Shown: positions 1 through 48,705 of the stretch, one piece after another
How positions within the stretch are numbered: the first letter of the stretch is position 1
Layout: each line of letters opens with the position of its first letter
From: Scyliorhinus canicula
Lineage: Eukaryota
DNA length: 64,000 nucleotides
Direction: 5' to 3'
Assembly: GCF_902713615.1 (NCBI RefSeq)
Contig: NC_052147.1
Coordinates: 239,912,886 to 239,976,885 of the forward strand
The notes under the pieces: generated by a model
What the model was told of the DNA's origin: nothing
What the model saw: only the letters and a program-made list of their open reading frames with translations
The model's database searches: none
Program-made: the position numbers and the translations under genes

Positions 1-412
1 AACGTTTAGAAGAATGAGGGGAGATCAAATTGAGGTATAAAGATGATGACAAAAGGGATGGATAAAGTAGATGTGAGCAGATGCTTCCTCTTGTGGGCCA
101 TTCTAGAACAAGAGGTCAAAGTCTCAGCATAAAGGGTAGCAAACTTAAAACAGATGAGGAGAAACTACTCCCAAAGTTTGTGAATCCGGAATTCACTATC
201 CCAGAATGCGGTGGATGCTGGGGCAGTGAGTAAAATTTAAGGAGGCATTAGGCATATTTTTAATTAGTAATGGGTTGAAGAGTTACATAGAATGGACAGA
301 ATCTGTGGAGATGAGACCATGATGAGATCACCCATGATCGTATTGAATGGTGGAGCAGGCTCGAGAGGCTAAATTGCCTACTCCTGTTTCTGGTTCTTTT
401 TTCTTATGTTCT
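1..412 (+). mobile_element. CR1-clade LINE, 3' fragment
   Basis: Degenerate ORF2 C-terminus (RRMRGDQIEVYKM-like) and CR1 3' tail ggctaaattgcctactcctg...ttcttatgttcta. Confidence 0.8.
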
Positions 413-606
413 AAGAAAGAACTGTTCTGTCTCATTCCACCTTCCAGCACTTGGTCTGTAGCCCTCTAGATAACAGCACCTCAAGCACAAATCTGGTGTT
501 TTTCATTGATAAGGGGATTTCTTGAGGAATATGGGGTTATGGGGAGAGTTGGCATGAGAATGGGGATGAGGAACATGTCAGCCATGATCAAATAGCAGAG
601 CAGACT

Positions 607-3600
607 TTTTTTTTGAAAAAGTATTTTTATTAAGGTTTTGCAGAATTTTTCATAATAAAACAGTAGTAACAATAATAACAAAACAAACTAGAGTGAACAT
701 TAACATAGTGCAAAAAGAGAATATACAATAACAATTAAATAGACATTACCACACACGACTCAGTCTTCCCACACCATTCCAATGAAGCACTCACACCCCC
801 CCCCACCTACGGATTGCTGCTGCTGCTGACATTTTAATTTTCCCCGCGAAAGTCGACGAACGGCTGCCACCTCCTAGAGAACTCGAGCATAGACCCTCTT
901 AAGGCAAACTTTATTTTCTCGAGGCTGAGAAACCCAGCCATGTCGTTAACCCAAGTCTCTACACTCGGGGGCTTTGAGTACCTCCACATTAATAAAATCC
1001 GTTTCCGGGCTACTCGGGAGGCAAAGGCCAAGACGTCTGCCTCTTTCGCCCCTGAACTCCTGGGTCTTCTGACACTCCAAAGATCACTATCTCTGGACTC
1101 GGCACCACCCATGTGTTAAGCACCTTGGACATTGCCCTCACGAAGCCTGCCAGAACTCTGTAAGCTCCGGGCATGCCCAAAACATGTGGACATGGTTTGC
1201 AGGGCTGCCCTTGCACCTCATACAACTGTCTTCTACCCCAAAAAACTTGCTCATTCTCACTGCCGTCATGTGTGCCCGGTGGACTACCTTAAATTGAATT
1301 AGACTGAGCCAGGCACATGATGAGGAGCAATTAACCCTGCCCAGGACCTCTGCCCACAGACCCACTTCCAACTCTTCACCTAGCTCCTCCTCCCACTTGC
1401 CCTTCAGCTGCTCCACCGGGGTTTCCTCTGCCTCCTGTAGTTCCTGGTAGATATCCGACACATTCCCCTCCCCCACCCAGGTGCCGGAGACCACCTGTCC
1501 TGTATCCTCAGTGGCGGCAGCATCGGAAAGGCCACAACCTGTTTTTTCAGGAAGGCTCGTATTTGCAGATATTTAAAGGCGTTTCCTGGAGGAAGATTAA
1601 ATTTGTCCTCTGGCGCCTTCAAACTGGGAAAGCTTCCGTCTATGAACATATCTCCCATCCTTCTGATGCCTGCCCTCTGCCAGCTCTGGAACCCACCATC
1701 CATCCTACCCGGGACAAACCTGTGGTTGTTACATATCGAGGTCCAGACCGACGCTCCCTCCACCTTCTTGTACCTCCTCTCCTCCCAGATCCGCAGTGTC
1801 GCCACCCACCGGACTTGTGGAGTAAGGGGTCAGCGAGAACGGCAAAGGAGCCGTTATCAAGGCTCCCAGACTAGTATCTTTAAATGATGCCACCTCCAGC
1901 TGCTCCCCCCCCCCCCCCCCCCCCATTGCCCGCTTCCTAATCATAGCTATATTGGCCACCGAGTAGTAGTTGCGAAAGTTCGGCAGCACCAACCCCCCCC
2001 CCAACTGCGCTCCAAAAGCGATCTCCTTACTCGTGGGGTCTTATTTGGCCACACAAAGCCCAAAATGATCCTACTCACCCGATTTTAAAAAAGGCCTCCG
2101 GGATGAAGATGGGGAGGCACTGAAAGACGAACAAAAATCTGGGGAGGACAGTCATTTTCACGGTCTGCACCCTCCCTGTCAGTGACAGCGGGAGCATGTC
2201 CCACCTTTTAAAGTCCCCTTCCATTTGCTCCACCAACCGGGTCAGGTTGAGCCTGTGCAGGGCATCCCATTTCCTGGCCACCTGTATACCCAGGTAACAA
2301 AAACTTTTCTCTACCATCCTGAGCGGTATCTCTTTCAGTCTCTCCTCCAGCCCCTTGGCTTGGATCACAAACAACTTGCTCTTTCCCATGTTCAATTTGT
2401 ACCCCTGAAAAACTACCAAAATCCCTCGGGATCCGCAGAACCTCCCCCATTCCCTCCACAGGGTCCGAAATGTACAGGAACAAATCATCCGCGTATAGAT
2501 GTTTCCCCCCCCGCCAGTTCCTCAAGGCTCTCAGCACCATAGCTAGCGGTTCTATAGCTAGGGCAAATAGTAACGGGGAGAGGGGCACCCCGCCTCGTTC
2601 CCCGGTGAAGCTCGAAGTACCCCTCAGCCGGATCGTACATACACTTGCTACAGGCGCCTGGTACAACAATTTCACACAGCCAATAAAGCCCTCACGAAAC
2701 CCAAACATCCCCAGCGTTTCCCCACAGGTACTCCCACTCCACCCGGTAAAGGCTTTCTCTGCGTCCATCGCTTTACCACCTCTGCCTCCCCTCCCTCTGA
2801 GGGCATCATAATAATCTTCAAAAGTCCCCTGACATTGGTATTGAGTTGTCTGCCTTTAACAAACCCAGTCTGGTCATCCTCTATCACCCTGGGACGCAAT
2901 CTTCAATTCTTGTGGCCAGAATTGTAGCTAGCAATTTGGCATCCACGTTTAAAAGCAAAATCGGCATGTATGACCCGTAATGTTCCGGGTCCTTCCCTCG
3001 TTTAAGAATGAGTGAGATTAAGGCCTGTGACATTGTTGGGGGAGGGTTCCTTTCTCTCTCTCGCCTCATTGAAGGCCCTCATCAGGAGTGGGCTCAATAT
3101 TTCTGAAATTTTCTTACAGAATTCTACCAGGTAACCATCCGGCCCTGGGGCCTTACCCGATTGCATGCCCTCTATGCCCTTGACAATCTCCTCCAATTCA
3201 ATCGGAGCCCCCAGCCCCTCCACCAGGTCCTCTTCCACCTTTGGAAACGTCAACTGGTCCAAACATTGCCTCATCCCTTCCGCTCCCGTCGGGGGCTCCA
3301 ACTCGTATAGTTTACTATAGAATTCCTTAAAGACTCAGTTCACCCCCCCCCCCCTTCTTTACTCCCCCGATTTCTCTGGCTCCCTCCCTCTTTCGCAGTT
3401 GGTGTGCCAGCATTCTACTCGCTTTCTACCCGTACTCATAGACAGCCCCCGTTGCCTTCCTCAGCTGTGCTACCGCTTTCCCTGTGGTCAGCAGTTCAAA
3501 CTCCGCCTGCAGACATGCCGCTCCCTCAGTAGCCCAGCCTCGGGGGCCTCCGCGTATCTCCTGTCCACTCGGAGTATCTCCTTCACCAGTCTCTCCCTCT

Positions 3601-6381
3601 CCACTCTTTCTCTCTTTTCCCTATGGGAGCGAAATTGAGATGAACTGCCTTCAGAGCCTCCCAGACCGTTGCCGCTGCTACCTCACCCGTATCATTTGTT
3701 TCCAGGTAATCCTGGATGTTCCTGCTAATCCGCCCGCAAACCTCTTTGTCCGCCAGCAGCCCCACATCCAGTCTCCAAAGTGGGCGCTGCCCCCTCTCTC
3801 CTCACTAAGCCGCAGGTCCACCCAGTGCGGGGCATGGTCCGAGACTGTGATTGCTGAGTAATCTGTCCCCGCCACCTTTGGGATTAACGCCCTGCTCAAG
3901 ACAAAGAAGTCTATGCGGGAATAAACCTTATGAACGCGGGAGAAAAAAGAGAACTCCTTCGCTCTCGGCCATGTGAACCTCCAGGGATCCCCCCCATCTG
4001 CTGCTCCATAAAGCCCTCCAATTTCTTTAGCCACTGCCGGTCGCTTCCCTGTCCTGGACTTCAATCGGTCCAGCTCGGGGTCAATGGCTGTGTTAGTCTC
4101 CCCCATGATCCGGTTGTGTGACTCTAAGTCCGGGATTTTGCCTGGCATGCATCTCATAAATTCCACATCATCCAAATTCGGAGCGTAGACGTTCACAAAC
4201 ACCACCCAGACCCCCTCCCACTTTCCACTCACCATTATATACCTGCCCCCCCTTATCTGCCACAATTCTCCCAGCCTCAAATGCCACACCCTTACTGATC
4301 AGAATTGCTATGCCCCTGGTCTTCGAATCCAGTCCTGAATGGAACACCTGGCCTACCCATCCCTTTCTCAATCTCGTGTGATTTGCGAGCTTTAAATGTT
4401 ACTCCTGAAGCATTGCTACGTCTGCCTTTAACCCCTTTAGATGCGCAAACATGCGCACTCTTTTGACCGGCCCATTCAAACCCCTCACATTCCATGTGAT
4501 CAGCCTGGTAGGGGGATCAACCCCACCCCCGCCGACTAGCCATCGCCCTTTTTTGGCCAACCTCGAGCCCGCGCCTTTCGCTTCCTCAAGCGCACCCATA
4601 GGGAGCCATTGCCCCCGACCCTCAATTGGGACCCCTCAATTGATACCTCCTCTGTCAGCAAAGCAGCACCCCCCCCCCCCCCCCCCAACTGGCCGGACCC
4701 CTCTCCCCACATGAATAAACCAATTAAACTATCTCTCCAGCCCCAGTGAGTAAATAGTAATACAAAACAAAAAATAAACAGAAGACCCTAACATTGCCCC
4801 ATGAGGAAACACTTGTTGAACCAAGGCTCCAAAACCCGAAAAATAGCACAAAGTACAGGGCCCCCTTCGTATCTCAAGTTTGCCGAAAACACTGCACCCT
4901 CCAGCCACCACCACAGCCCTTACACCCACCCAACATGTATACAATCTTATATTAGAAACGGTACCGTGTTACCCAGCCCCACCGCAGCATTCCACCAAAG
5001 CTTAACTGTCCTTTAATTCGAGTCCAGCTTTTCTTGTTTGACGAATGACCACGCCTCGTCCGGCGTCTCAAAATAGTGATGCCGTTCCTTGTACGTGACC
5101 CATAGCCTCGCTGGGTGTAGGATCCCAAATTTCACGCCCTTGCTGAAGAGGGTCGCCTTCATCCGGTTGAATCCAGCACGCCTCTTGGCCAGCTCCGCAC
5201 CCAGGTCCTGGTAGATGCGTATCACGCTGTTCTGCCACCTGCTGCTCTGTTCTTTTTTTGCCCACCGCAAGACAAGTTCCCTTGTCCGAGAAGCAATGAA
5301 ATCTTACCACCATGGTCGTCGGTGGTTCATTTGCCTTGGGCTTCCTTGTGAGGGCTCTGTGTGCTCCGTCCAGCTCCGGGGGTCGAGGGAATACCCCCGT
5401 CCCTATCAGCGTCTTCAGCATCTTGAACACTAATGCTCTGGCATTCGACCCCTCCACACCTTCGGGGAGGCCCACAATTCTCAAGTTCTGTCTCCTGGAC
5501 CTATTTTCTAGGTCCACCAGCCTCTCCTGCCACTTCTTGTGGAGGTCATCCTGCGCCTCCACCTTAAGGGCCAATACGACCAACTCGTCCTCATGGTCGG
5601 ATAACTTTTTCTCCATCTCCTTAATCGCTTTCCCTTGTGTCGCCTGAGTTGCGTTCATTTGGTCTATTGATGCCTTCATCGGGGCCAGTATGTCCTTTTT
5701 AAGATCAGCAAAGCAGTCCCTAAGGAACTCCTGTTGCTCCTGTGCCCACCTCGCCCATGCACCCTGGTCTATACCGGCCGCCATGCCGTGTCTCGGCGCC
5801 CGCTCCGCACGCCTCTGTCTGTTGGGACTTAAACGCTTCACCCGGCCACTCCTGGTCCAGCTATCCATACAACAGAGAGGGAATCCTTTTGGCAGTGTTC
5901 ACTTCACCAATCTGCCCCAAAAGGTCCGTGAAAACTCCTGAAAAAAGGTTTAAGAGTCCGTTCCAGACGGGAGCTGCCGAATGCGCGACCTACTCCTCCA
6001 TGGCCGCCACGGGAAGTCTCGTCACCGCATCTTCAGTGGCCTTTGCGAGATCTTTTCGCAGCTGTTCCCCTTGCTGCTGGAATTCAGCTTTAATAAAGGC
6101 CCTCAAATCAGCTTGAAGCCTTTAAGCTTGCCGTTCCCCCGCCTGCATGTTTGAAGAGGCTTTTGTCTTTGCTGCAGCACCAGCCAAATTCCTCACTGTT
6201 TCTGCCAGGTCTGGTAACTAAGAAACATCCCATTCCTGGGGGAAAGTACTCCTCCAACATTCACCTACATCTTTTCATCAAAATTCCACCCCGTATTGAT
6301 TAAAAAGAGCTCTTTTCTGTAACTTTGGGCAGGAGCTGCTTTGTATGTTACCGCTTACTCCATGGTCCACACCAGAAGTCT
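607..6381 (-). mobile_element. L1 LINE, end-to-end and decayed, with an extra 5' module
   Basis: Perfect 14-bp TSD tagcagagcagact (593-606 and 6382-6395) inside a CR1 tail. Poly-T at 607-614. ORF1 fragments 5013-5868 (LENRSRRQNLRIVGLPEG). ORF2 fragments with EN (ITWNVRGLNGPVKR, NVYAPN, YSRIDFF, SDHAP), RT (GKAPGPDG, DQTGFVKGR, LYADD) and C-terminus (HVHMFWACP). Many frameshifts. Confidence 0.95.
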
Positions 6382-7099
6382 TAGCAGAGCAGACTCGATG
6401 GGCCGAATGGTCTACTTCTGCTCCTGTATCAATACTCTTTGCCACCCGTGCTACTTGTCGTGAAACAGCATCTGGCATTCAGTATTTAACTTTGTTGTTC
6501 AATAATGGTTACTTGGCTGAGGTAGTGGACGGCTGCTGCTATTTGTGACTTTATACCCCACCATAAATGTCTCTACAGCTACATGAGTGATTTAATAAGC
6601 TATTGATAATTAGCTAGCACCTTCATTTAAATGCAAGTCTTATAAGGTTCATGTCACCAGATTGTTCAGCTAAGAAGTACTCAAGCTTGCCCTCCAGTCT
6701 ACACATTACTTCCCTTCATTGCCACTAATTTATATTCTGAGATTCAGCCAGTGCACGCTCCTCAAACTACTGAGTGCTTCTTGCATATTGGAGTGATGAT
6801 GCACAGTACTCTGAACCACTTAATTTATGTGATACAGGGTCATGTTCTTGGAGTATTTTCTATGTGGTCAAACACTTCTTGTGAATAATCCGCTTAAGTT
6901 ATGCGCTTAAATGAGCATAACTCCACTTATTTGATCATTCAATTTTAACACCGTAAAATAGAAATTTAGTGCTATTTAGATCATTCAGATTAAATTATTG
7001 TAGTTTTTTGTGCAGCGATTGGCTGAATTATGGAAGTGGACAATATAAACTTTGGTTTACTTATTCATGAAATGGAAATTCTATGGAACTGCAGTGGAA

Positions 7100-22500: not shown

Positions 22501-22536
22501 ATCGAATGTATGCAATATTGACATGCATTTGGTTAT

Positions 22537-25500
22537 TTTTTTTAAGATTTTTATTCTCCTTTTTCACATTTTCTCCTAAATTTACACCTACCAACAATAA
22601 ACAATAATCAGTAACGAATGCAATGTCAATCCCCATATCAATAACAACAATCCCATCCTCCCAACAAACCCCCAAACATTAGACCATATGTTAATATAAA
22701 CAAATAACAAAAAGGAATCAGAAATCACCCATAGTCACCCTTAACATATACCCCCTCCCAATGTTCGATGTAATCCAATTCTCAAAAGTGCATAATGAAT
22801 AACGCCCATGAATTGTAGAACCCCTCCATCCATTCAGTTCAAAATTGACCTTCTCAAAAGTCAGGAATTCCAGCAGGTCCCCCCGTGACGCCAGGGCACA
22901 GGATGGAGAGGTTGATCTCCATCCCAACAGAATCTGCCTTCAGGTGATCAACGAGACGAAGGCTACAACATCTGCCTCCGCACCCGTTTCCAACCCCTGC
23001 TGGTCCGACACCCCGAAAATGGCCTCCCGAGGGCCTGGGTCCAGTTTCACGTGCACCACTTTAGCGATTACCCTAAAAATCCCCCCCCCCCCCCCCCCGC
23101 GCAATGTTCATGCACACCTTCTACCCCCTCAAAGAGTCGGCTCATCCTCGTCCATGTGAGGTATGCTCTATATACCACCTTCAGCTGTATCAGCCCCAAT
23201 CTCGCGCAAGAGGTGGAGGCGTTCACCCTCCGGAGCACCTCATACCAGAACCCCTCCTCCATACCCTCTGCCAACTCTTCCTCCCACTTCGCCTTGATCC
23301 CATCCAGCAATGCCTTCTCCTCTTCCAAAATAGCCCCGTAAACCGCCGATTACCCCCTTCTCCAGTCACCCTATCGTCAGCACCTTCTCCAGCAATGTGG
23401 GGGCCGGCTCTACCGGGAAGCTCTGTATCTTCTTTCTGGAAAAGTCTCGAACCTGCATGTATCTAAATATTTCCCCCTACTCCAGCCCATACTTCGCTCC
23501 CAGCTCCTTCAATCCTTCAAGGCAACCTCCAAGAAACTAATCTTTTAGTGTCTTAATTCCCATCTCTGAAAATTTCCATCCCACTGCCCTGGCTCAAATC
23601 AATGGTTCCCCCGAATCAGCATTTCCCTTGACCCTGCTCCCAAACCCAAAGTGCTGGCAAAACTGCCTCCAAATTCTCAACAAAGCTATTACTACCAGAC
23701 ACCCTGAGTATCTCCCCAGGGAGTGGCGCTGTTGCTAGCGCCTTCAATCCCGACCCCCAACACAAACTCTTCTCCATTCTGACTAACTGGGAGTCAACCC
23801 CTCTGACCTACCATGTACCTTCTCCACATTCGCCACCCAGTAATAATACTCCAGTTTTGGAAGACCCAAACCCCCTGCCTGCCTTCCTCTCTGTAGTAGC
23901 ACCTTTCTAATTCTGGCGAAATTCCCTCCCCATGTGAACGAGGTAATCATCCCTTCAATCATTTTAAAGAATGCCTTTGGCAGGAAAATCGGCAGGCATT
24001 GGAAAATAAACAGAAATTGCGACAGCACGTTCATTTTAATCGCCTGTACCCGACTTGCCTGTGACAGAGGGAGACCATCCCACCTTGCCAGATCAGCTTT
24101 CACCCTCCCCACCAAACTAGAAATGTTGTACCTGCAGAACCCCCGCAATCCCAAGCAACCTGCACCCCCAGTGAGTCACTGCCCTACAGAATGGCAGCCC
24201 CCCACCCCCGACCGAGACACCACAAAATATTCACTCTTGTCTAGATTTAATTTGTACCCCGAGAAAGACCCAAAGCAGTTCCAGTATTCCCCCTATTGAC
24301 ACACACCACTCCGACAGGCATAATAACAAGTCATCGGCATATAAGGACACCCTATGCTCTATCCGCCCCGCACTAACCCTTTCCATACCCCCAAACGTCT
24401 TAATGCGATGGCCAATGGCTCAATCGCGAGTGCAAACAGCAGGGGGGGAATAGGACATCCCTGCCTAGTCCCACGATGGTGAGAAAAGTAGTCCGACCTG
24501 ATGTTATTTGTGCGGACACTTGCCCTCAACTCCTTATATAGTAGCTTTACCCAGTTCACAAATCTTGCTCCAGTCCCAAACCGCTCCAAAATTGCCATCA
24601 AGGGGCAATTTAGCGTGGCCAATCCACCTAACCTGCCGGTCAAATGCTTTCTTGGCGTCCAATGCCGCAACCATCTCTGCCGGTGCCATAACCACATTCA
24701 ATACCCTCCTAATGTTTGAAAAGAGCTGCCTCCCTCTCAAACACTCTCTGATTTCCCCCATCGGGAGGCACTCCTCCAGCCTACCTGCCAGTACCTTCGC
24801 CAATATCTTTGGGTCCACGTTTAAAAGTGATATGGGCCTATACCGCCCACAATCCGTTGGATCCTTATCTCTTTTAAGCAACAGGGAAATCGATGCTTGC
24901 CCCAAAGTTTGTGGTAACACCCCCTTCCCTGTCGCCTCCTCAAACATCCCCACCATCAGGGGTGCCAGCTTATCTTTGATTTTTTAATAATATTCCACTG
25001 GAAACCCATCCGGCCCTGCCATCTTCCCCAACTGCATCCTCCCAGTTGCATCCTTTATCTGCTGCTCCACGAACACCCCCTCTAATGCAATCCTGTCCAC
25101 CTCCCCTAACCTTAGGTACTCCAGCCAATCTAGAAATTCCTGCATCTCCCAGTCTCCCCCAGGTGGCTCTGAGCTGTACAACCTTTCATAGAATTTCTTA
25201 AAGACCTTGTTAATCTGATCTGGACCTAACACCAACTTCACTGCCCTGTCCTGCACCCGCACAATTTCCCTTGCCGCAGCCTCCCTACGGAGCTGCCCTG
25301 CCTTCTCTCCGTGCTCGTAAACTGCATCCCTTGCTCGCCTCAATTGGCATACCGCCTTCCTGGTAGATAGTCGGTCAAAGTTCGCCTGTAGTTCCTTTCT
25401 CTTTTCCAACCTCGCTGGGTCCCCATCGTCTGCATACCTCCTATCTACCTCTAGCATTTCATCTATTACCCTCTGACGCTCTAACCTCCCCTCCTTGTCC

Positions 25501-28099
25501 AGCTAGCCTTGAACGATATCACCTCACCCCTCACCACCATCTTTAGAGCCTCCCAGACAACTGCCTTCAACACCTCACCCATGTAGTTGGAACCTACGTA
25601 TTCCTCGATTACTTTTTCAATTTTGTCACAGAATCCTCAGTTCCCCAACAGTCCCACATCTAGTTTCCACCCTGGTCTCTGTACCACCCCCTTCTCCAGT
25701 ACCATATCCACCCAATGCGGAGCATGATCTGATATTGCAATTGCCAGGTACTTCGACCCCATAACGCCAGTCAGCAGCGCTTTCTCCACCAAGTAAAAGT
25801 CGATCCGCGAGTATACCTTATGGACCGCTGAGAAAAACTAGTACTCCAACCTCCAAGGGTCCACCCCTCCCATTTCCACCATTAACCCAGCCAGCGCCCC
25901 CCCCCCCCCCCCCCCCAACAGGACTAGCGAGCGCAGCCATGACCTGTCCAATTTTGGCTCCTGCACCAAGTTCTAGGCCCCCCCCCCGCTATCAGTTTGT
26001 GAGTCTAAGTCGTGGTGGCCCCACACACCTTCGTGAATCCTACATCGTCCCAATTGGGACTATGTACACTTGCCAGTGCCACCACTCTCCCTTCCACGCC
26101 CCTGTCACAATCACATATATGTCTTTTTTTTTAATTTCGAGTACCCAATTATTATTTTTTCCAATTAAGGGGCAATTTAGCGTGGCCAATCCACCTAACC
26201 TGCACATCTCTGGGCTGTGGGGGTGAAACCTACGCAGACATGGGAGAGTGTGCAAACTCCACTCGGAGAGTGACCCAGGGCCGGAATTCGAACCCGGGTC
26301 CTCAGCACCACAGTCCCAGTGCTAACCACTGTGCCACATCACAATCACATACCGAACCTCCTGATTTGCCACCACCTTCTCCATCTGGAAGTGTACCCTT
26401 TTGCTGACCACTACTGCTACCCCGCAAGCCCTTCCGTCAAATCCAGAGTGAAACACCTGACTAACCCAGCCCTTTTTAACTCTACCACGTCCTCTCCCAC
26501 CCAGTCCGGGAAGAAAAAGAAAAACAATCTAACCCATACAATTCAATTCAATAACATATAACCGTTGCAACAACAAAAAAAGGAAACAAAAATGCCAATC
26601 AAACAAAACACAAACTTAAACTCTATAACAACGTGAAGTCAAGTAAGTTACAATGCAGGTCAATAAAAAGAAAGTTATAACATTTCTACATTTTCCAGCT
26701 CCCCAATCACTGTCCATGATCTCTCTTCCAGCTCCAATCCTCACTTCTGTCGCATGCCTTCTGCCTTCATGAACGCCTCAACCGCCTCCACAGTTTCAAA
26801 TAAAAATCTTTGGTGTTGTATATCACCCTCAGCTTTGCCGGGTATACCATACCAAATTGCAGTCCTTGTTGTACAGTGCAGCCTTCACTCGGCTGAACGC
26901 TGCTCGTCTCTTTGCCAACTCCGCCATCAAGTCCTGGTAAATCCGAACTCTAGCACCACCCCACTACACCTCCTGCTTCTGCTTCGCCCAGCTTAACACC
27001 ACCTCCTTCATGTGGTCTTTATGGAAGTAGATAATTACTGCTCTTGGCGGCTCATTTACTTTGGGTTTCGGCCTTAACGACCGATGAGTTTGGTCTAGTT
27101 CATACTGGAAGGGATCTTCACCCCCCCCCAATCAACTCCGCCAGCATCTAGTGAAGCATTCTGTTAGCCTTGAGCCCTCTGACCCTTCGGCCAAGCTCAC
27201 AATTCTCAGATTTTGCCGCCTTGAGCAGTTCTCCAAGTCCTCGAGCTTTGCTCGGAGTCCTCTGATGACCTCCACCACCCTCCACAGCTCGTCCCCTATC
27301 GAGGTGAGCTGGCCGCTGTGCTGCGACACAGCCTCCTCCACTTCCTTCATTGTTTAACCTAGTTCTCTCACCTCAGCCGATGTCTTTGCCATAGCTACCC
27401 TTACCGGGGCGATTGCCTCCTCCACCAATGATTTCAGTGCGACCGCCATCTCCTTCCTCAACGTCTCCATGTGCCTCGCAAGCTGTTTCTCCAGCTCCAC
27501 AGCCATCACCTCGGTCACCTTTTCCACCGTAAGTAGTGCAGTCCCACCACACGGTCTGGCATCCGCCATCTTGTCAGCGCTTTTGCTGGTCCTCTCATTT
27601 GACGGCGAAACAGTGTTTCCTCCCTTCTTCACAGCTGTTTTTGGCATTCTTTAACGGCTTATTATTTTCCCCTTCTTTCTTCAATCTTAAAATAAATAAA
27701 TAACAATAAAATATTTTTTTAAATTAAAATAAAAAAAATAAAGAAATCTCTTTCCCCCGGGACCGGACTTCAAACTTCTCAAACATCCATTTTCAGCGGG
27801 GGCCACCTGATGTGCTCTGCTCCCCCTCTACATTGCGTCCTGAATTCAACTGCCTCGCCTCGTGTCAAGCTCCTCCCCTACTGCTTATTTCTGGCTCGAT
27901 GCCCCCTACTCCTCCGGCCGCCGGACACTCCCACGGGGCTCCTCACCGGCTCCGACTGGCCCGACCCGTGCCCGTCCCTCAGGTTCCAAAGGTCGAAGAA
28001 AGATTTTTTTTAAAACAACGGGGTAACCCCCGAAAAGCATATCGCGGAATTGCGGGAATCTCTTCTCAACGCGACTGCTCGCAAGCGCCACCAGAAGTC
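22537..28099 (-). mobile_element. L1 LINE, end-to-end with internal deletions
   Basis: Perfect 17-bp TSD gacatgcatttggttat (22520-22536 and 28100-28116). 5' end GACTTCTGG, poly-T 3' end. ORF1 27132-27647 (LENCSRRQNLRIV). ORF2 pieces RPISLLNVDPKILAKVLA, GTRQGCP, GGLGLPK. The ORF2 start is deleted. Confidence 0.95.
26118..26338 (-). mobile_element. Short V-SINE with A-rich tail inside the L1
   Basis: 13-bp TSD tcacaatcacata (26105-26117 and 26339-26351). tRNA head plus V-domain. Confidence 0.88.
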
Positions 28100-28299
28100 G
28101 ACATGCATTTGGTTATATGGAAATTCCAACAAATTGGAAGGTCTATCATTAGAATTAATGTGTATTTTGAATTTGTACATGGGATTTGAAAATGTTATAG
28201 TAGGTAATGCAAAATTTAATTTAGTCCTACTCTACAATTGCAACATTAATATCAGAGTCACATGTAGTGCCGAAGACTTGTGCTGTAAAACTAGCTGTG

Positions 28300-41894: not shown

Positions 41895-43226
41895 ACATGA
41901 TCATCTCGGACTTTGTAGGGGTGGGGAAGGTGCTGAGGGTGGGAAGGACCCTGCTGCGACGGGGGAGGGGGGGGGGGGTGTGTGTTGGCGTTGCCGAACT
42001 TGCTTCATTATTATTGGGCAGCAAATGTGGACAAATTGCGGCGGTGGTGGGGAGGAGAAGGGGTAGAGTGGGTTCGGATGGAGGAGGAATCTTGTAAAGG
42101 GTGGAGGGCTATGGTGGCGGCAGTGTTGCCAATGGCTCCAAGTAGGTATTGAGGGAGCCCAGTGGTGTAGTCCAGGGTGAAGAGGATGGAAGAGATGTTG
42201 GTGTTAACGCCGCTGTGCAAGAATCATGGGTTTGAGCTGGGGGGATGGATAGTGTATACAGGAGGTGGAGGGAAATGGGACTGATCAAGGTGGGGGATTT
42301 GTATTTGGAGGAAGGGTTTGCCATCTGGAGGAGCCAAGGGTAGAGCTGCCGAGAGGGAATGAGTTCAGGTATCTGCAGGTTATGTGCAAAAGGTCTGTAG
42401 GGGGTTCCCTAGATTGCTGGGATACACTCTGCTGGAGTGCTGCTGCTTCCGGATGTGGAAGGGGAGGGAAGAATTGGGGATATATATAAGTGGCTGGGGG
42501 AGCAGAGAGGTGAGCGGGTGGTGAAGATCAAGGAGAAATGTGAAGCGGAGTTCGGAGGAGAGATCAATTGAGTATGGAGTGAGGCATTGCGAAGAGTAAA
42601 CGGGACCTCTTGTGCAAGGATGAGCCTGATACAGTTTAAGGTGGTGCACAGGGTGCATATGACTCGGTCATGAATGAGTGGGTTCTTTGAGGGGGTAGCA
42701 GATGAATGTGAGAGGTGGCAGTGTGGGCCAGCGAATCACATGCACATGTTTTGGAGCTGCGAAAAATTGGGAAGTTTCTGGGCGGGGGTGTTTGTGGTCT
42801 TAGCCAGGGTAGTGGAGTAGGAGGTGGACTTGGAACCTTTGGTGGTGATATTTGGGGTTTCAGAGAAGCTGGAGCCCATGGAGAGTAGGAAGGCCGATGT
42901 CGTAGCCTTCACCTCTCTGATTGCACAGCGGCAAATTTTGCTGGAGCTGCGGTCGGCTCACCACCTGGGGTAGCGGCATGGTTGGGTGACCTGCGGTCGG
43001 AGAAGATAAAATATGAATTAAGGGGCTTAGCAGGGGGGGTTTGAGAAAAGGTGGGGGATGTTTGTGACCGTGCTTGAGGAGCTGTTCATCGCAGGGGGGT
43101 GGGGGGGAGGGTGAAAAAGGGGAAGAGTCTGTACAGACTGTATAATTGATTGTTGTGAAGTAAGTTTCCTGGGTGTTTATTTGCTGTAACCTGCTTTGAT
43201 GCATGTTTGTAATAAAATACATTTAA
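41895..43226 (+). mobile_element. 5'-truncated L1 (ORF2 C-terminus and 3'UTR)
   Basis: SLIQFKVVHRVHM and HMHMFWSC motifs, AATAAA at 43211. TSD aaatagaat(g/a)tgg at 41882-41894 and 43227-43239. Confidence 0.88.
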
Positions 43227-45754: not shown

Positions 45755-46151
45755 ATCTAGAGAGAGAAACTGACTGCGGGTAAGGAAGGGCTGGGTGGGA
45801 CAAACTTTTCATGTGTGATTTGATACCAAGGCAAGGGCGGTGACCATATTAATTAGCAGGACAGTAGCGTTCACAGCGATGAATGCAATGACCGACCCGG
45901 GGGGGATGATTTGTTATGGGCAACAGGACCCTGGAATGGGCCCCAGTAGTACTGATAAATATATGTACTGCAAATTGGAACAACGCAGTATTCGTCAAAT
46001 TGCTATGCCCAAAATTCCTGACCTAGGCACTCACCGACTCATCATGGGGAGTGACTTTAATTACGTGCAAGACCCGAAAAATTGACAAATCCAACTCGGG
46101 GAGAAAGCCATAACAGGAATGCCTCGAGAGCTAAACATCTTCATGTAGCAG

Positions 46152-46183
<32 letters not shown>

Positions 46184-48705
46184 AGTTGACCCATGGAGGT
46201 TCAACCACCCGAGAGAAAAAGAGTTCTCCTCTTTCCACATGCACAAGGCTTACATCGCAGAGAAAATGGTGCAACCAGGGATAGGAGAGAATACTCCACG
46301 ATCATAATCTCGGACCACACATCCTAGTTAATCTTTATTAGTGTCACAAGTAGGCTTACATTAACACTGCAATGAAGTTACTGTGAAAAGCCCCTAGTCA
46401 GCACACTACAGCGTGAGGGAGAATTCAGAATGTTCAACTCACCTGACAAACATGTCTTTTGGGACTTGTGGGAGGAAACCGGAGCACCCGGAGAAACCCC
46501 ATGCAGACACTGGGAGAACGTGCAGACTCCGCACAGACAGTGACCCAAGCCGAAAACCAAACCCGAGTCCCTGGCATTGTGAAGCAAAAGTACTAACCAC
46601 CGTGCTACTGTGCCGCCCTTAGTTGGAGAGCAGCCGAGCCCAACACATCCCATGGAGGCTGGACACAGCCCTCTCACCACTAAGGAATTCTGTACAAAAA
46701 TATCCCAAGCTATCAACGGTTAGGAAACCTGCAACCAGAAGGGAGAGGTCTCGCCCTTCACGTTCTGGGATGCACTGAGAGCAATGATCGGGGTGGGGGG
46801 GGGGGGGAATAATAGCTTAAAGGGACAAGAGAGAAAGGGCAGCCAAGCAGCGGCTGATCAACTCCATACTGGAGGTGGATCAACAGTACTCCTTGGCTCC
46901 AACCGTGGAACTGCTGCCGGAAAAGAAAAAGCTGCAGATGGAATTTGTTCTGCTCTTCACAAGAAAAGCAGTCCACCAACTACACCAATCATGGGCCTTC
47001 TGCGAACATGGAGACAAAGCCAGCCGCAAGCTGGCGCGCCAACCAAGGAAGCAGACTGCCGCAAAGGAAATAGTGCAAGTTAGGAATAGGAATGGTAGGA
47101 TGGTGGCAGCCCCGAACAAGGTTAACGAGGCCGTTACAAATTTTTACGGGGGCCTATACACCTCTGAGCTCCCGGAGGGGGACTCTGAGATTAAACTGTT
47201 CTCAACAGACTGGAAATACAGGCGATGGGGAGAAAAAGAGGCAAGAACTGGAAGCACCGCTGGGACAGGATGAGATCATGGAATGCATTAATTCCAGGTA
47301 GTCAGGGAGGACGCCGGGGCCAGATGTGATCCCGGTGGACTTTTATTAAAAATTTGCAATGGCGTAGGCCCTGCTATTGCAGGAAATATTAAACGATTCA
47401 CTATCAAAGAGGCTCTGGCTGGCACAGGACTCGATCTCGTTGATCCCCAAGAAAGACAAAGGCCTGCCAGAGTGTGGATCAAACATGGAATGGGTCCAAA
47501 TGGAGGAGGCCTCCTGTACAGGGATGTCTTATAAGGCAGTGGCCATCATTTCACTCCCAGCCCCACCGCACCCACACTCGAGGAGTTTGGTGGTAATAGC
47601 CACATTAAAGACCTGGAACCAGTTCAAACATAGTGGTATCTCTATGGAGGCCTCCATCTGCAACAACCATAAATTCGACAAAGATAGACGCCACGTTTTG
47701 GGCTTGGAAGGAGGACAGAGGGACCTTGAGGGTGAAGGACATTTATGGTGGAAGGTAAGATAGCAACGCTGGGAGAACTGTTGGAGAAGCTTCAGCTCCC
47801 AAAAAGAAATGGGCTTCGGTATTTGCAGCTGCGTTATCATGCCGCTCATGCTCTGTAGGAAGGAAACCTGGAGGTGGAGGACAAGCGTCAGTGGTGTCAG
47901 ATGTGCCTAGCTAACCATACCCATATGTTCTGGTCTTGCCCCAGACTCAACGGGCTCTAGACAGCTTCTTTGAGGCTATGTCCAGGGCTATGGAGATTAA
48001 GATAGAGCCATGCCCGTTTGTGGCGGTTTTCGGGATGGCAGAGCATTCAAAGGTCTTCGCAGGGGCCAGGCGCCCTGGTCTTCACCCCTCTGATTACCCA
48101 AGGGAGACATCTGCTGGGCTGGAAGTTGGCAGCATCTCCCAGAACCTCTGAGTAGTTCGCTGACCTGGCTGAATTCCTGAAGCTCAAAGATAAAATTCTC
48201 AATCAGAGGCCGTGGATAGAGTCCACGACACATGGAGAAAGCTTTTCAACCTCTTCGAAGACCTGTTTGTAGCCAGCAACTTGGGGGGGGGGGGGGGGGG
48301 GTTGGCAGACAGGAGGGGAGGGAGGGAGGGGTGGACGAGTGGAGTGCCGCTGAGGAAAAGGGGACTATGCACTTGACGCAGGGGGAAAAGGGGAGGAGGA
48401 GGGCCCCACGCCATGAGGGACAAAGGCCCCTCTCGCATATTAGACACTGAGGAAGCAGTACAGCCTAACCATCCTCGAAAACAAAGGGTTTAAAATGACT
48501 CTCCCCATCGCTATTAATGTAAATACAACATTATATGTATGCCAGTATAAATAAGGAAACGCACTGCGAGGACTAAGGTCACAGACATTGTGGCAACCTG
48601 TAAATAATATGCCGTTTCAGTTGTTTTCTTTCTCTTTTCTCTGCTTGTTCTGTCTTGTGTAAAGTTTGATATTGTTAAAATTCCAATAAAAATATTTATT
48701 TTTTA
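45755..48705 (+). mobile_element. Decayed L1 ORF2 and 3'UTR with large internal deletions
   Basis: RKGWVGQTFH, IMGSDFN, EHGDKASRKLA, HTHMFWSCP. AATAAA near 48684. Contains an antisense V-SINE at 46329-46618. Confidence 0.85.

What the first reader, a model, noticed from the sequence alone, without database searches (positions are those of the whole stretch)
5960..6395. Chimeric L1: 5'UTR and ORF1 start of a second L1 stacked on a complete L1 within one TSD
Seen: the 14-bp TSD closes at 6382, but the main L1 already has its own 5' terminus at about 6020 (minus strand GAGACTTCCCGTGGCGGCCATGGAG...GCAGCTCC). The extra 360 bp begins with a homologous terminus (AGACTTCTGGTGTGGACCATGGAG...GCAGCTCC). 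It then encodes an ORF1-like helix, LQADLRAFIKAEFQQQGEQLRKDLAKATEDAV, resembling the ORF1 N-terminus of the L1 at 27354-27647, and breaks off exactly at the inner 5' end. Established: L1 lineages repeatedly recruit new 5'UTRs. Inference: this is a snapshot of promoter capture, by RT template switching or by read-through from a host L1 into a nested one, and may mark a dual-promoter L1 subfamily.
Basis: partly seen in the sequence, partly recalled or inferred. Interest (0 to 1): 0.72.

Follow-up and report, generated by a model that had tools for sequence, protein, structure and literature searches.

The report
Shark L1 with extra L1 head
A dead but complete L1 jumping gene in a catshark-type genome carries, in front of its own start, the first 361 bases (promoter region and start of the first gene) of a different L1. 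Both parts were pasted in as one piece, which is a clean single example of a known way for L1s to pick up new front ends.

Summary
A minus-strand L1 composite (607-6381) sits between a perfect 14-nt target-site duplication and ends in AATAAA plus an A8 tail. A paralogous copy of the target repeat runs uninterrupted across the TSD.

The inner L1 starts at 6020/6019 with the L1 5' extremity. The same motif opens the outer piece right after the TSD at 6381. It also opens a second, independently TSD-delimited L1 in the window (22537-28099). It matches the published L1 5'-end consensus of lizard and zebrafish.

The extra 361 nt are an L1 head of a related but different lineage. They hold a 233-nt UTR (inner: 236 nt), an ATG, and 42 codons collinear with the ORF1 N-termini of the inner L1 and of Scyliorhinus ORF1 proteins.

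Best reading: one retrotransposition event of a chimeric template. Read-through from a host L1 into a nested L1 (5' transduction) is slightly favoured over a reverse-transcriptase jump from the capped end onto a second L1 RNA. The two cannot be separated here.

Whether the junction is multi-copy (a propagating two-promoter subfamily) could not be tested, because no genome search or reads were available. This is a known kind of event and of modest interest.

The parts
6382..6395 (-). 5' copy of the 14-nt target-site duplication
   Evidence: Exact direct repeat of 593-606. It lies in register with an uninterrupted paralogous repeat copy.
6149..6381 (-). Outer L1 head: 233-nt 5'UTR starting with A+GACTTCTGGTG directly after the TSD
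   Evidence: The motif equals the published L1 5' extremity. It is CpG-poor (2 CpG, o/e 0.18).
6021..6148 (-). Outer L1 head: ORF1 start. ATG at 6148-6146, TAA at codon 9 (6124-6122), then 33 codons. It is cut off after codon 42.
   Evidence: Translation and collinear alignment with the ORF1 N-termini of the inner L1, P0023 and P0001. Smith-Waterman against P0001 gives z 5.0.
6019..6022 (-). Junction: outer ...GGTGAC | G | AGACTTCC... inner. One or two bases (G or GA) are of ambiguous origin.
   Evidence: The homologous terminus begins at 6019, so 6020 is an extra G relative to the outer terminus.
5785..6020 (-). Inner L1 5'UTR (236 nt), starting at the canonical L1 5' extremity; CpG-rich (o/e 0.85)
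5013..5784 (-). Inner L1 ORF1. The homologous start MAAG is at 5784-5782, and an in-frame upstream ATG is at 5868. One frameshift lies near 5300-5250.
   Evidence: HMMER/BLAST homology to L1 ORF1 proteins of Scyliorhinus and fish.
834..4599 (-). Inner L1 ORF2 (endonuclease, reverse transcriptase, zinc knuckle), broken by a dozen or more frame changes and stops
   Evidence: Frame map. Pfam RVT_1 E 8e-7; zf-RVT E 2e-4 and Exo_endo_phos E 0.03.
607..833 (-). 3'UTR with AATAAA (626-631) and A8 tail (607-614)
593..606 (-). 3' copy of the 14-nt target-site duplication

Best explanation
One target-primed reverse-transcription event inserted a chimeric L1. It consists of the first 361 nt of one L1 lineage (5'UTR plus 42 codons of ORF1) joined head-to-tail to the very first base of a complete L1 of a related lineage.

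Most likely the RNA template was already chimeric. At a source locus, the inner L1 had earlier inserted, in the same orientation, into the ORF1 start of a resident L1. Transcription then began at the resident L1's own start site, ran into the nested element, and ended at the nested element's poly(A) signal. That RNA was copied into this site. This is a 5' transduction in which the transduced DNA happens to be an L1 head.

Shown: a single TSD, a poly(A) end, two canonical L1 5' termini, and the L1 nature of the extra piece.

Inferred: the source arrangement and the read-through.

The confidence given (0.45) is for the read-through route specifically. That the composite arrived as one chimeric insertion, by read-through or by a template jump, I hold at about 0.85.
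For: A single perfect 14-nt TSD encloses both parts, with AATAAA and an A tail at the far end. An uninterrupted paralogue of the target repeat acts as a stand-in for the empty site.

Both parts begin with the L1 5' extremity. This motif is defined independently by the TSD of the outer piece and by the 17-nt TSD of a second L1 at 22537-28099. It equals the published consensus GACTTCCGGTG of lizard and zebrafish L1 (PMC5381506).

The extra piece has L1 head anatomy. Its UTR is 233 nt against 236 nt in the inner L1, and its ORF1 start is collinear with clade relatives.

The inner L1 is full length to its first base. Full length is expected under read-through, and is the pattern reported for the 17 human L1 insertions carrying 5'-appended, transcript-start sequence (bioRxiv 10.1101/2025.02.02.635956).

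The outer UTR is CpG-poor (o/e 0.18) with TG/CA excess, against 0.85 and 1.12 for the two ordinary L1 UTRs in the window. This fits an older resident copy acting as host.
Against: No source locus was seen and no other copy could be searched, so read-through is inferred from priors and not shown.

The CpG argument is weak. The 128-nt coding part of the outer piece is not CpG-depleted (o/e 0.62), and natively CpG-poor short L1 UTRs are known.

Every structural feature is equally produced by a template jump at the capped 5' end.

A resident L1 old enough to have lost its CpGs would still need a start site that fires accurately.
Confidence: 0.45

Rival explanations
1. Template jump during reverse transcription. 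The L1 reverse transcriptase copied the inner L1 RNA to its capped 5' end, added or copied a G, then jumped onto a second L1 RNA, or onto a 5' fragment of one ending near nt 361. It copied that RNA to its 5' end before the cDNA was joined to the target.
For: The structural evidence is the same as for the best explanation. There are one or two bases of ambiguous origin, including an extra G, exactly at the inner 5' end, as expected for a jump at a capped end. Strand switching is one of the three models proposed for mosaic L1 families (PMC3600994). Chimeric retrocopies made by LINE template jumps are documented (PMC2104539 and PMC4476161, listed).
Against: Known template-switch or ligation chimeras such as U6/L1 mostly carry 5'-truncated L1 parts, whereas this L1 is complete (contrasts the two classes). 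Entry of the acceptor at an internal position needs a broken RNA or an internal landing. The extra G is equally explained by the earlier insertion of the nested L1 under the read-through model.
Confidence: 0.3
2. Three events at this locus. An outer L1 inserted here and made the TSD. The inner L1 later inserted into its ORF1 start. The rest of the outer L1 was then deleted, for example between the two A tails or by recombination between the two ORF2 regions.
For: This would also give one TSD around the present structure. It fits the outer UTR looking older (CpG o/e 0.18 against 0.85).
Against: It needs a deletion that leaves a full-length L1 ending exactly in AATAAA, an A tail and the TSD. There is no composition or CpG switch along the inner L1 that would mark a crossover. 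The two heads are too diverged for homologous recombination: only 33/50 identity at the tip and nothing alignable beyond. The TSD copies are still identical.
Confidence: 0.07
3. This copy is one descendant of a propagating subfamily whose normal 5' end is the stacked double head. The chimera arose once by either route above and then amplified. This reading is not exclusive of the routes above.
For: Nothing direct. The composite would keep a canonical start site at its tip. Unchecked notes from other windows of this genome report L1 5' ends built from repeated UTR/ORF1-junction units.
Against: The outer ORF1 start would act as an upstream reading frame in front of the real ORF1. No second copy exists in the 64-kb window. 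[quoted passage not shown]
Confidence: 0.1
4. Assembly artefact: the junction at 6021/6020 joins two different L1 loci.
For: None.
Against: The join falls exactly on a canonical L1 first base. The two sides share no repeat that could mislead an assembler. The outer tip and the far 3' end share a perfect TSD in register with an intact paralogous target.
Confidence: 0.03

Closest known systems
L1 5' transduction / 5'-appended chimeric L1 insertions (human; Law & Burns 2025, bioRxiv 10.1101/2025.02.02.635956)
   Same: Extra sense-oriented sequence that begins at a transcription start lies between the 5' TSD and a (near) full-length L1. One TSD and a poly(A) end enclose both.
   Different: Here the appended sequence is not a host-gene exon but the head of another L1 (promoter region plus ORF1 start). 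No splice-site signature can be assessed, and the host is a shark.
Template-switch or ligation chimeric retrocopies (U6/L1 and related; LINE double template jumps in Magnaporthe, PMC2104539)
   Same: Two RNA copies are fused in the same orientation inside one TSD. The 5' partner is copied to its own 5' end.
   Different: In those chimeras the L1 partner is usually 5'-truncated and the 5' partner is a small or cellular RNA. Here the L1 is complete and the partner is a 3'-cut L1 head.
Mosaic L1 families with exchanged 5' ends (mouse and rat; Sookdeo et al. 2013, PMC3600994)
   Same: A 5' terminus from one L1 lineage is combined with the body of another.
   Different: Those are amplified families in which the new 5' part replaces the old one at a homologous position. 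Here the new head is stacked in front of an intact old head, and only one copy is known.
Monomer-array 5'UTRs of mouse and rat L1
   Same: More than one promoter-bearing unit lies in tandem at the 5' end.
   Different: The two units here are heterologous (alignable only over about 50 nt at 66%). The upstream one includes coding sequence, and there is no array.

Membership tests
L1 (LINE-1) retrotransposon (inner element) | ORF1 of L1 type (coiled coil, RRM, C-terminal domain) | tested here: met
   ORF1 5784-5013 matches L1 ORF1 proteins. P0001 gives E 2e-43. P0007 is named 'L1 transposable element RRM domain-containing protein'. Relatives carry PF02994/PF27943.
L1 (LINE-1) retrotransposon (inner element) | ORF2 with AP-type endonuclease and reverse transcriptase | tested here: met
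   RVT_1 E 8e-7; zf-RVT E 2e-4; Exo_endo_phos only E 0.03, on a short piece. ORF2 is broken into a dozen or more frames.
L1 (LINE-1) retrotransposon (inner element) | Poly(A) end and TSD | tested here: met
L1 head (outer 361 nt) | Starts with the conserved L1 5' extremity | tested here: met
   A+GACTTCTGGTG directly after the TSD. The same motif lies at the inner start and at a second TSD-delimited L1. It matches the published lizard and zebrafish consensus.
L1 head (outer 361 nt) | UTR followed by an ORF1 start homologous to L1 ORF1 | tested here: met
   The UTR is 233 nt, then M-x-A-G...F-I-K..F..L-R-K-D-L, collinear with the inner L1, P0023 and P0001. Only P0001 is statistically clear (z 5.0, 4/2000). 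The parent family was not found.
L1 5' transduction | Extra sequence and a full-length L1 enclosed by one TSD | tested here: met
L1 5' transduction | A source locus where the transduced sequence lies directly upstream of the progenitor L1 | not testable with these tools
   No search of the source genome is on offer.
Template-switch chimeric retrocopy | The two partners are not contiguous anywhere in the genome | not testable with these tools
   Same limits as above.
Recombinant / mosaic L1 family | Many copies with independent TSDs share the junction | not testable with these tools
   There is one copy in the window. The genome-wide count is unavailable.
Monomer-array 5'UTR | Tandem copies of one unit | tested here: not met
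   The outer and inner heads align only over the first 50 nt (33/50). The rest is unalignable.

The most novel reading that the evidence does not exclude
The composite is a member or founder of an L1 lineage that spreads with two stacked L1 promoters. That would make it a caught intermediate of 5'UTR turnover, or of monomer-array formation, in a cartilaginous fish. In this group of short-UTR L1s, published surveys saw no 5'UTR replacement.
Probability: 0.1. Interest if true: 0.6.

Novelty: new member of a known kind. Interest (0 to 1): 0.33.

Why it matters
How L1 lineages acquire new 5'UTRs is inferred mostly from family-level phylogenies in mammals, and physical intermediates are rarely seen. 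This copy shows, in a shark, that a complete L1 can gain a second L1 promoter region in a single retrotransposition event. That event is the raw material for 5'UTR exchange.

It also extends the conserved GACTTCCGGTG-type L1 5' extremity, described in lizard and zebrafish, to three L1 lineages of a cartilaginous fish. As a single decayed copy with no evidence of spread, it illustrates a known process and does not open a new one.

Tried and rejected
- **Earlier-findings index:** nothing by place or by sequence.
- **Word search with the inner ORF1 and with P0001:** the best relative of the inner ORF1 is only 50% identical, so neither L1 family is represented in the protein collection.
- **Loci of the Scyliorhinus proteins P0001 and P0024:** no DNA was returned because the files are too large.
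- **Metagenome scan with the terminus motif:** three chance matches without L1 context.
- **Rfam on 5700-6700:** nothing, so the extra piece is not a known small RNA.
- **Sensitive blastn of the outer piece against the window:** only the inner tip.
- **Exhaustive protein search, not run:** a 33-42-residue coiled-coil peptide can only reach significance on near-identical proteins, and the same collection lacks even the inner family. The operators also asked for restraint.
- **Rejected readings:** a monomer-type repeat, because the units are heterologous. A homologous-recombination mosaic, because the join is at non-homologous positions (inner nt 1 to outer nt 361). A splice junction at the GTGAC of the outer end, because those bases are retained in the composite.

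Full report
**What is there**

On the minus strand, 607-6381 (5,775 nt) is one insertion.
- An exact 14-nt direct repeat (minus strand AGTCTGCTCTGCTA) lies at 593-606 and 6382-6395.
- The 3' side ends with AATAAA (626-631) and an A8 tail (607-614) that abuts the repeat.
- The target is itself a dispersed repeat. A paralogous copy at 270-440 aligns with the 5' flank on one side and the 3' flank on the other, and the two flanks overlap only on the 14 nt.

So the duplication is a real target-site duplication, and everything between its copies arrived in that site.

**The inner element is a complete but dead L1**
- ORF1 (5784-5013, one frameshift) matches L1 ORF1 proteins. The nearest are 'uncharacterized proteins' of Scyliorhinus torazame and S. 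canicula, at about 50% identity.
- ORF2 (about 4599-834) carries endonuclease, RT and zinc-knuckle signatures. It is split over a dozen or more frames.
- Earlier notes of this scan call the genome small-spotted catshark. The protein hits agree with a catshark origin, but I did not verify the species.

**Is 6020 a true L1 5' end? Yes.**
- The first 50 nt of the outer piece, whose start is fixed by the TSD, were slid along both strands of the window. The best non-self match is 6019-5970 at 33/50. The next best is 28/50, and the background is 12.5 +/- 3.1.
- A second full-length L1 in the window (22537-28099, minus) has its own 17-nt TSD and an AATAAA/A-tail end. It starts with GACTTCTGGTGGCG directly after that TSD.
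- The motif GACTTCYSGTGKYG occurs three times in the window, only at these three places, against 0.13 expected.
- It matches the conserved L1 5' extremity published for lizard clade 1 (GACTTCCGGTGN8ATGGCG) and zebrafish (GGACTTCCGGTT) (PMC5381506).
- The inner L1 therefore begins at its canonical first base, preceded by one extra G (6020) relative to the outer terminus.

**Is the extra 361 nt an L1 head? Yes, from a related but different lineage.**
- Its UTR is 233 nt, against 236 nt in the inner L1.
- An ATG at 6148-6146 opens a frame that reads MQAGERQA, then a stop, then RLQADLRAFIKAEFQQQGEQLRKDLAKATEDAV.
- This aligns collinearly with the ORF1 starts of the inner L1 and of P0023 (M-x-A-G..Q). 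It also aligns with P0001, with which it shares a 4-residue insertion before the L/M-R-K-D/E block.
- Only the P0001 comparison is statistically clear (z 5.0, 4 of 2,000 shuffles).
- Beyond the first 50 nt the two UTRs do not align, so this is not a monomer repeat.
- Rfam finds nothing in the region.

**The junction**

The outer piece ends ...GGTGAC and the inner motif begins AGACTTCC, with a G between them. One or two bases are of ambiguous origin. Extra G residues at full-length L1 5' ends are commonly attributed to the cap; this is from general knowledge and was not tested here. The outer reading frame runs nine codons into the inner UTR and stops. In an RNA it would therefore act as a short upstream frame.

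**Mechanism**

Both parts lie inside one TSD, and the outer piece lacks any 3' end of its own. The simplest history is a single retrotransposition of a chimeric template. Two routes give exactly this product.
- **(a) Read-through (5' transduction).** At a source locus the inner L1 sat nested, in sense orientation, in the ORF1 start of a resident L1. Transcription from the resident start site ended at the nested poly(A) signal.
- **(b) Template jump.** A jump occurred from the capped end of the inner RNA onto a second L1 RNA.

I favour (a) modestly, at about 0.45 against 0.30, for three reasons.
- The L1 part is full length. This matches the human class of transcript-start sequences appended to near-full-length L1s, and contrasts with the mostly truncated L1 parts of U6-type chimeras.
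- A rough estimate from general knowledge, not a computed result, suggests that nested sense L1-in-L1 sources are commoner than end-of-template jumps onto an L1 5' fragment.
- The outer UTR is CpG-poor (2 CpG in 233 nt, o/e 0.18, TG+CA o/e 1.25). The two ordinary L1 UTRs in the window have o/e 0.85 and 1.12. Several CG positions of the inner tip read TG or CA in the outer tip. An older host copy would look like this.

The last point is weak. The outer coding part is not depleted (o/e 0.62), and natively CpG-poor short UTRs exist.

A third route is possible: an outer L1 inserted here, a later nested insertion, and then loss of the outer remainder. It needs a very precise deletion. It finds no crossover signal along the inner L1, and I give it about 0.07. 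Mis-assembly is unlikely given the register of the join and the TSD, but it was not checked with reads.

**What could not be done**

It is not possible with the tools on hand.
- Shark genome loci returned no DNA.
- The protein collection holds neither family.
- A metagenome motif scan gave only chance hits.

The 'dual-promoter subfamily' idea therefore stays open at roughly 0.1.

**Comparison with what is known**

Chimeric or 5'-transduced L1 insertions are documented in human. Template-jump chimeras are documented in several organisms. Transfer of 5' termini between L1 families is inferred in mouse and rat, with three proposed mechanisms. This locus is a shark example in which the appended sequence is itself an L1 head, stacked in front of the old head and not replacing it. 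[quoted passage not shown] The raw event is therefore worth noting, but one decayed copy does not show evolutionary success.

**Verdict**
- Observation: confirmed.
- Interpretation: partly supported.
- Novelty: a new member of a known kind.
- Interest: about 0.33.

Noticed in passing
window 22520-28116: A second full-length but decayed L1 lies on the minus strand at 22537-28099 (5,563 nt). It has a 17-nt TSD (minus strand ATAACCAAATGCATGTC) at 22520-36 and 28100-16, an AATAAA/A-tail end, and a 452-nt CpG-rich 5'UTR (o/e 1.12). Its ORF1 belongs to another clade (closest is P0008, 55%).
   Followed up: partly
window 6367-6380, 6005-6018, 28086-28099 (all minus): Three L1 lineages of this cartilaginous fish start with GACTTCYSGTGKYG. 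This is the same 5' extremity published for lizard clade 1 and zebrafish L1, so the start-site element looks conserved across jawed vertebrates while the rest of the UTR is not. The outer and inner heads also share CCATGGAG and GCAGCTCC blocks within the first 50 nt. The CCATGG core recalls the YY1-type box at a similar distance from the start of mammalian L1; that is from memory and untested.
   Followed up: partly
window 784-803, 1899-1934, 1983-2013, 4663-4697: Long C runs on the plus strand, which are G runs of up to about 19 nt on the L1 sense strand. They lie in the ORF1-ORF2 spacer, inside the C-terminal part of ORF2 (read as Gly runs) and in the 3'UTR. They may be real expansions or homopolymer length errors, and some frame changes lie near them.
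   Followed up: no
window 270-440 and 500-606 / 6382-6450: The L1 landed in a dispersed SINE-like repeat, which has another copy about 200 nt away in the same orientation.
   Followed up: partly
protein P0001 (Scyliorhinus torazame), residues 1-37: The annotated ORF1-like protein begins with a 24-residue tandem duplication that spans its start codon: MAAARDKGELQE + LEQREGPGKKDR, then MAAARDKVELQE again. This is a small-scale repeat of the UTR/ORF1 junction. Unchecked notes from other windows of this genome describe L1 5' ends built from such units. No DNA was available to check it.
   Followed up: no
window 46005-46253 (+) and 42608-42754: Further L1 ORF2 fragments of other lineages (39% aa identity to the inner endonuclease piece; one 148-nt stretch at 69% nt identity).
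   Followed up: no
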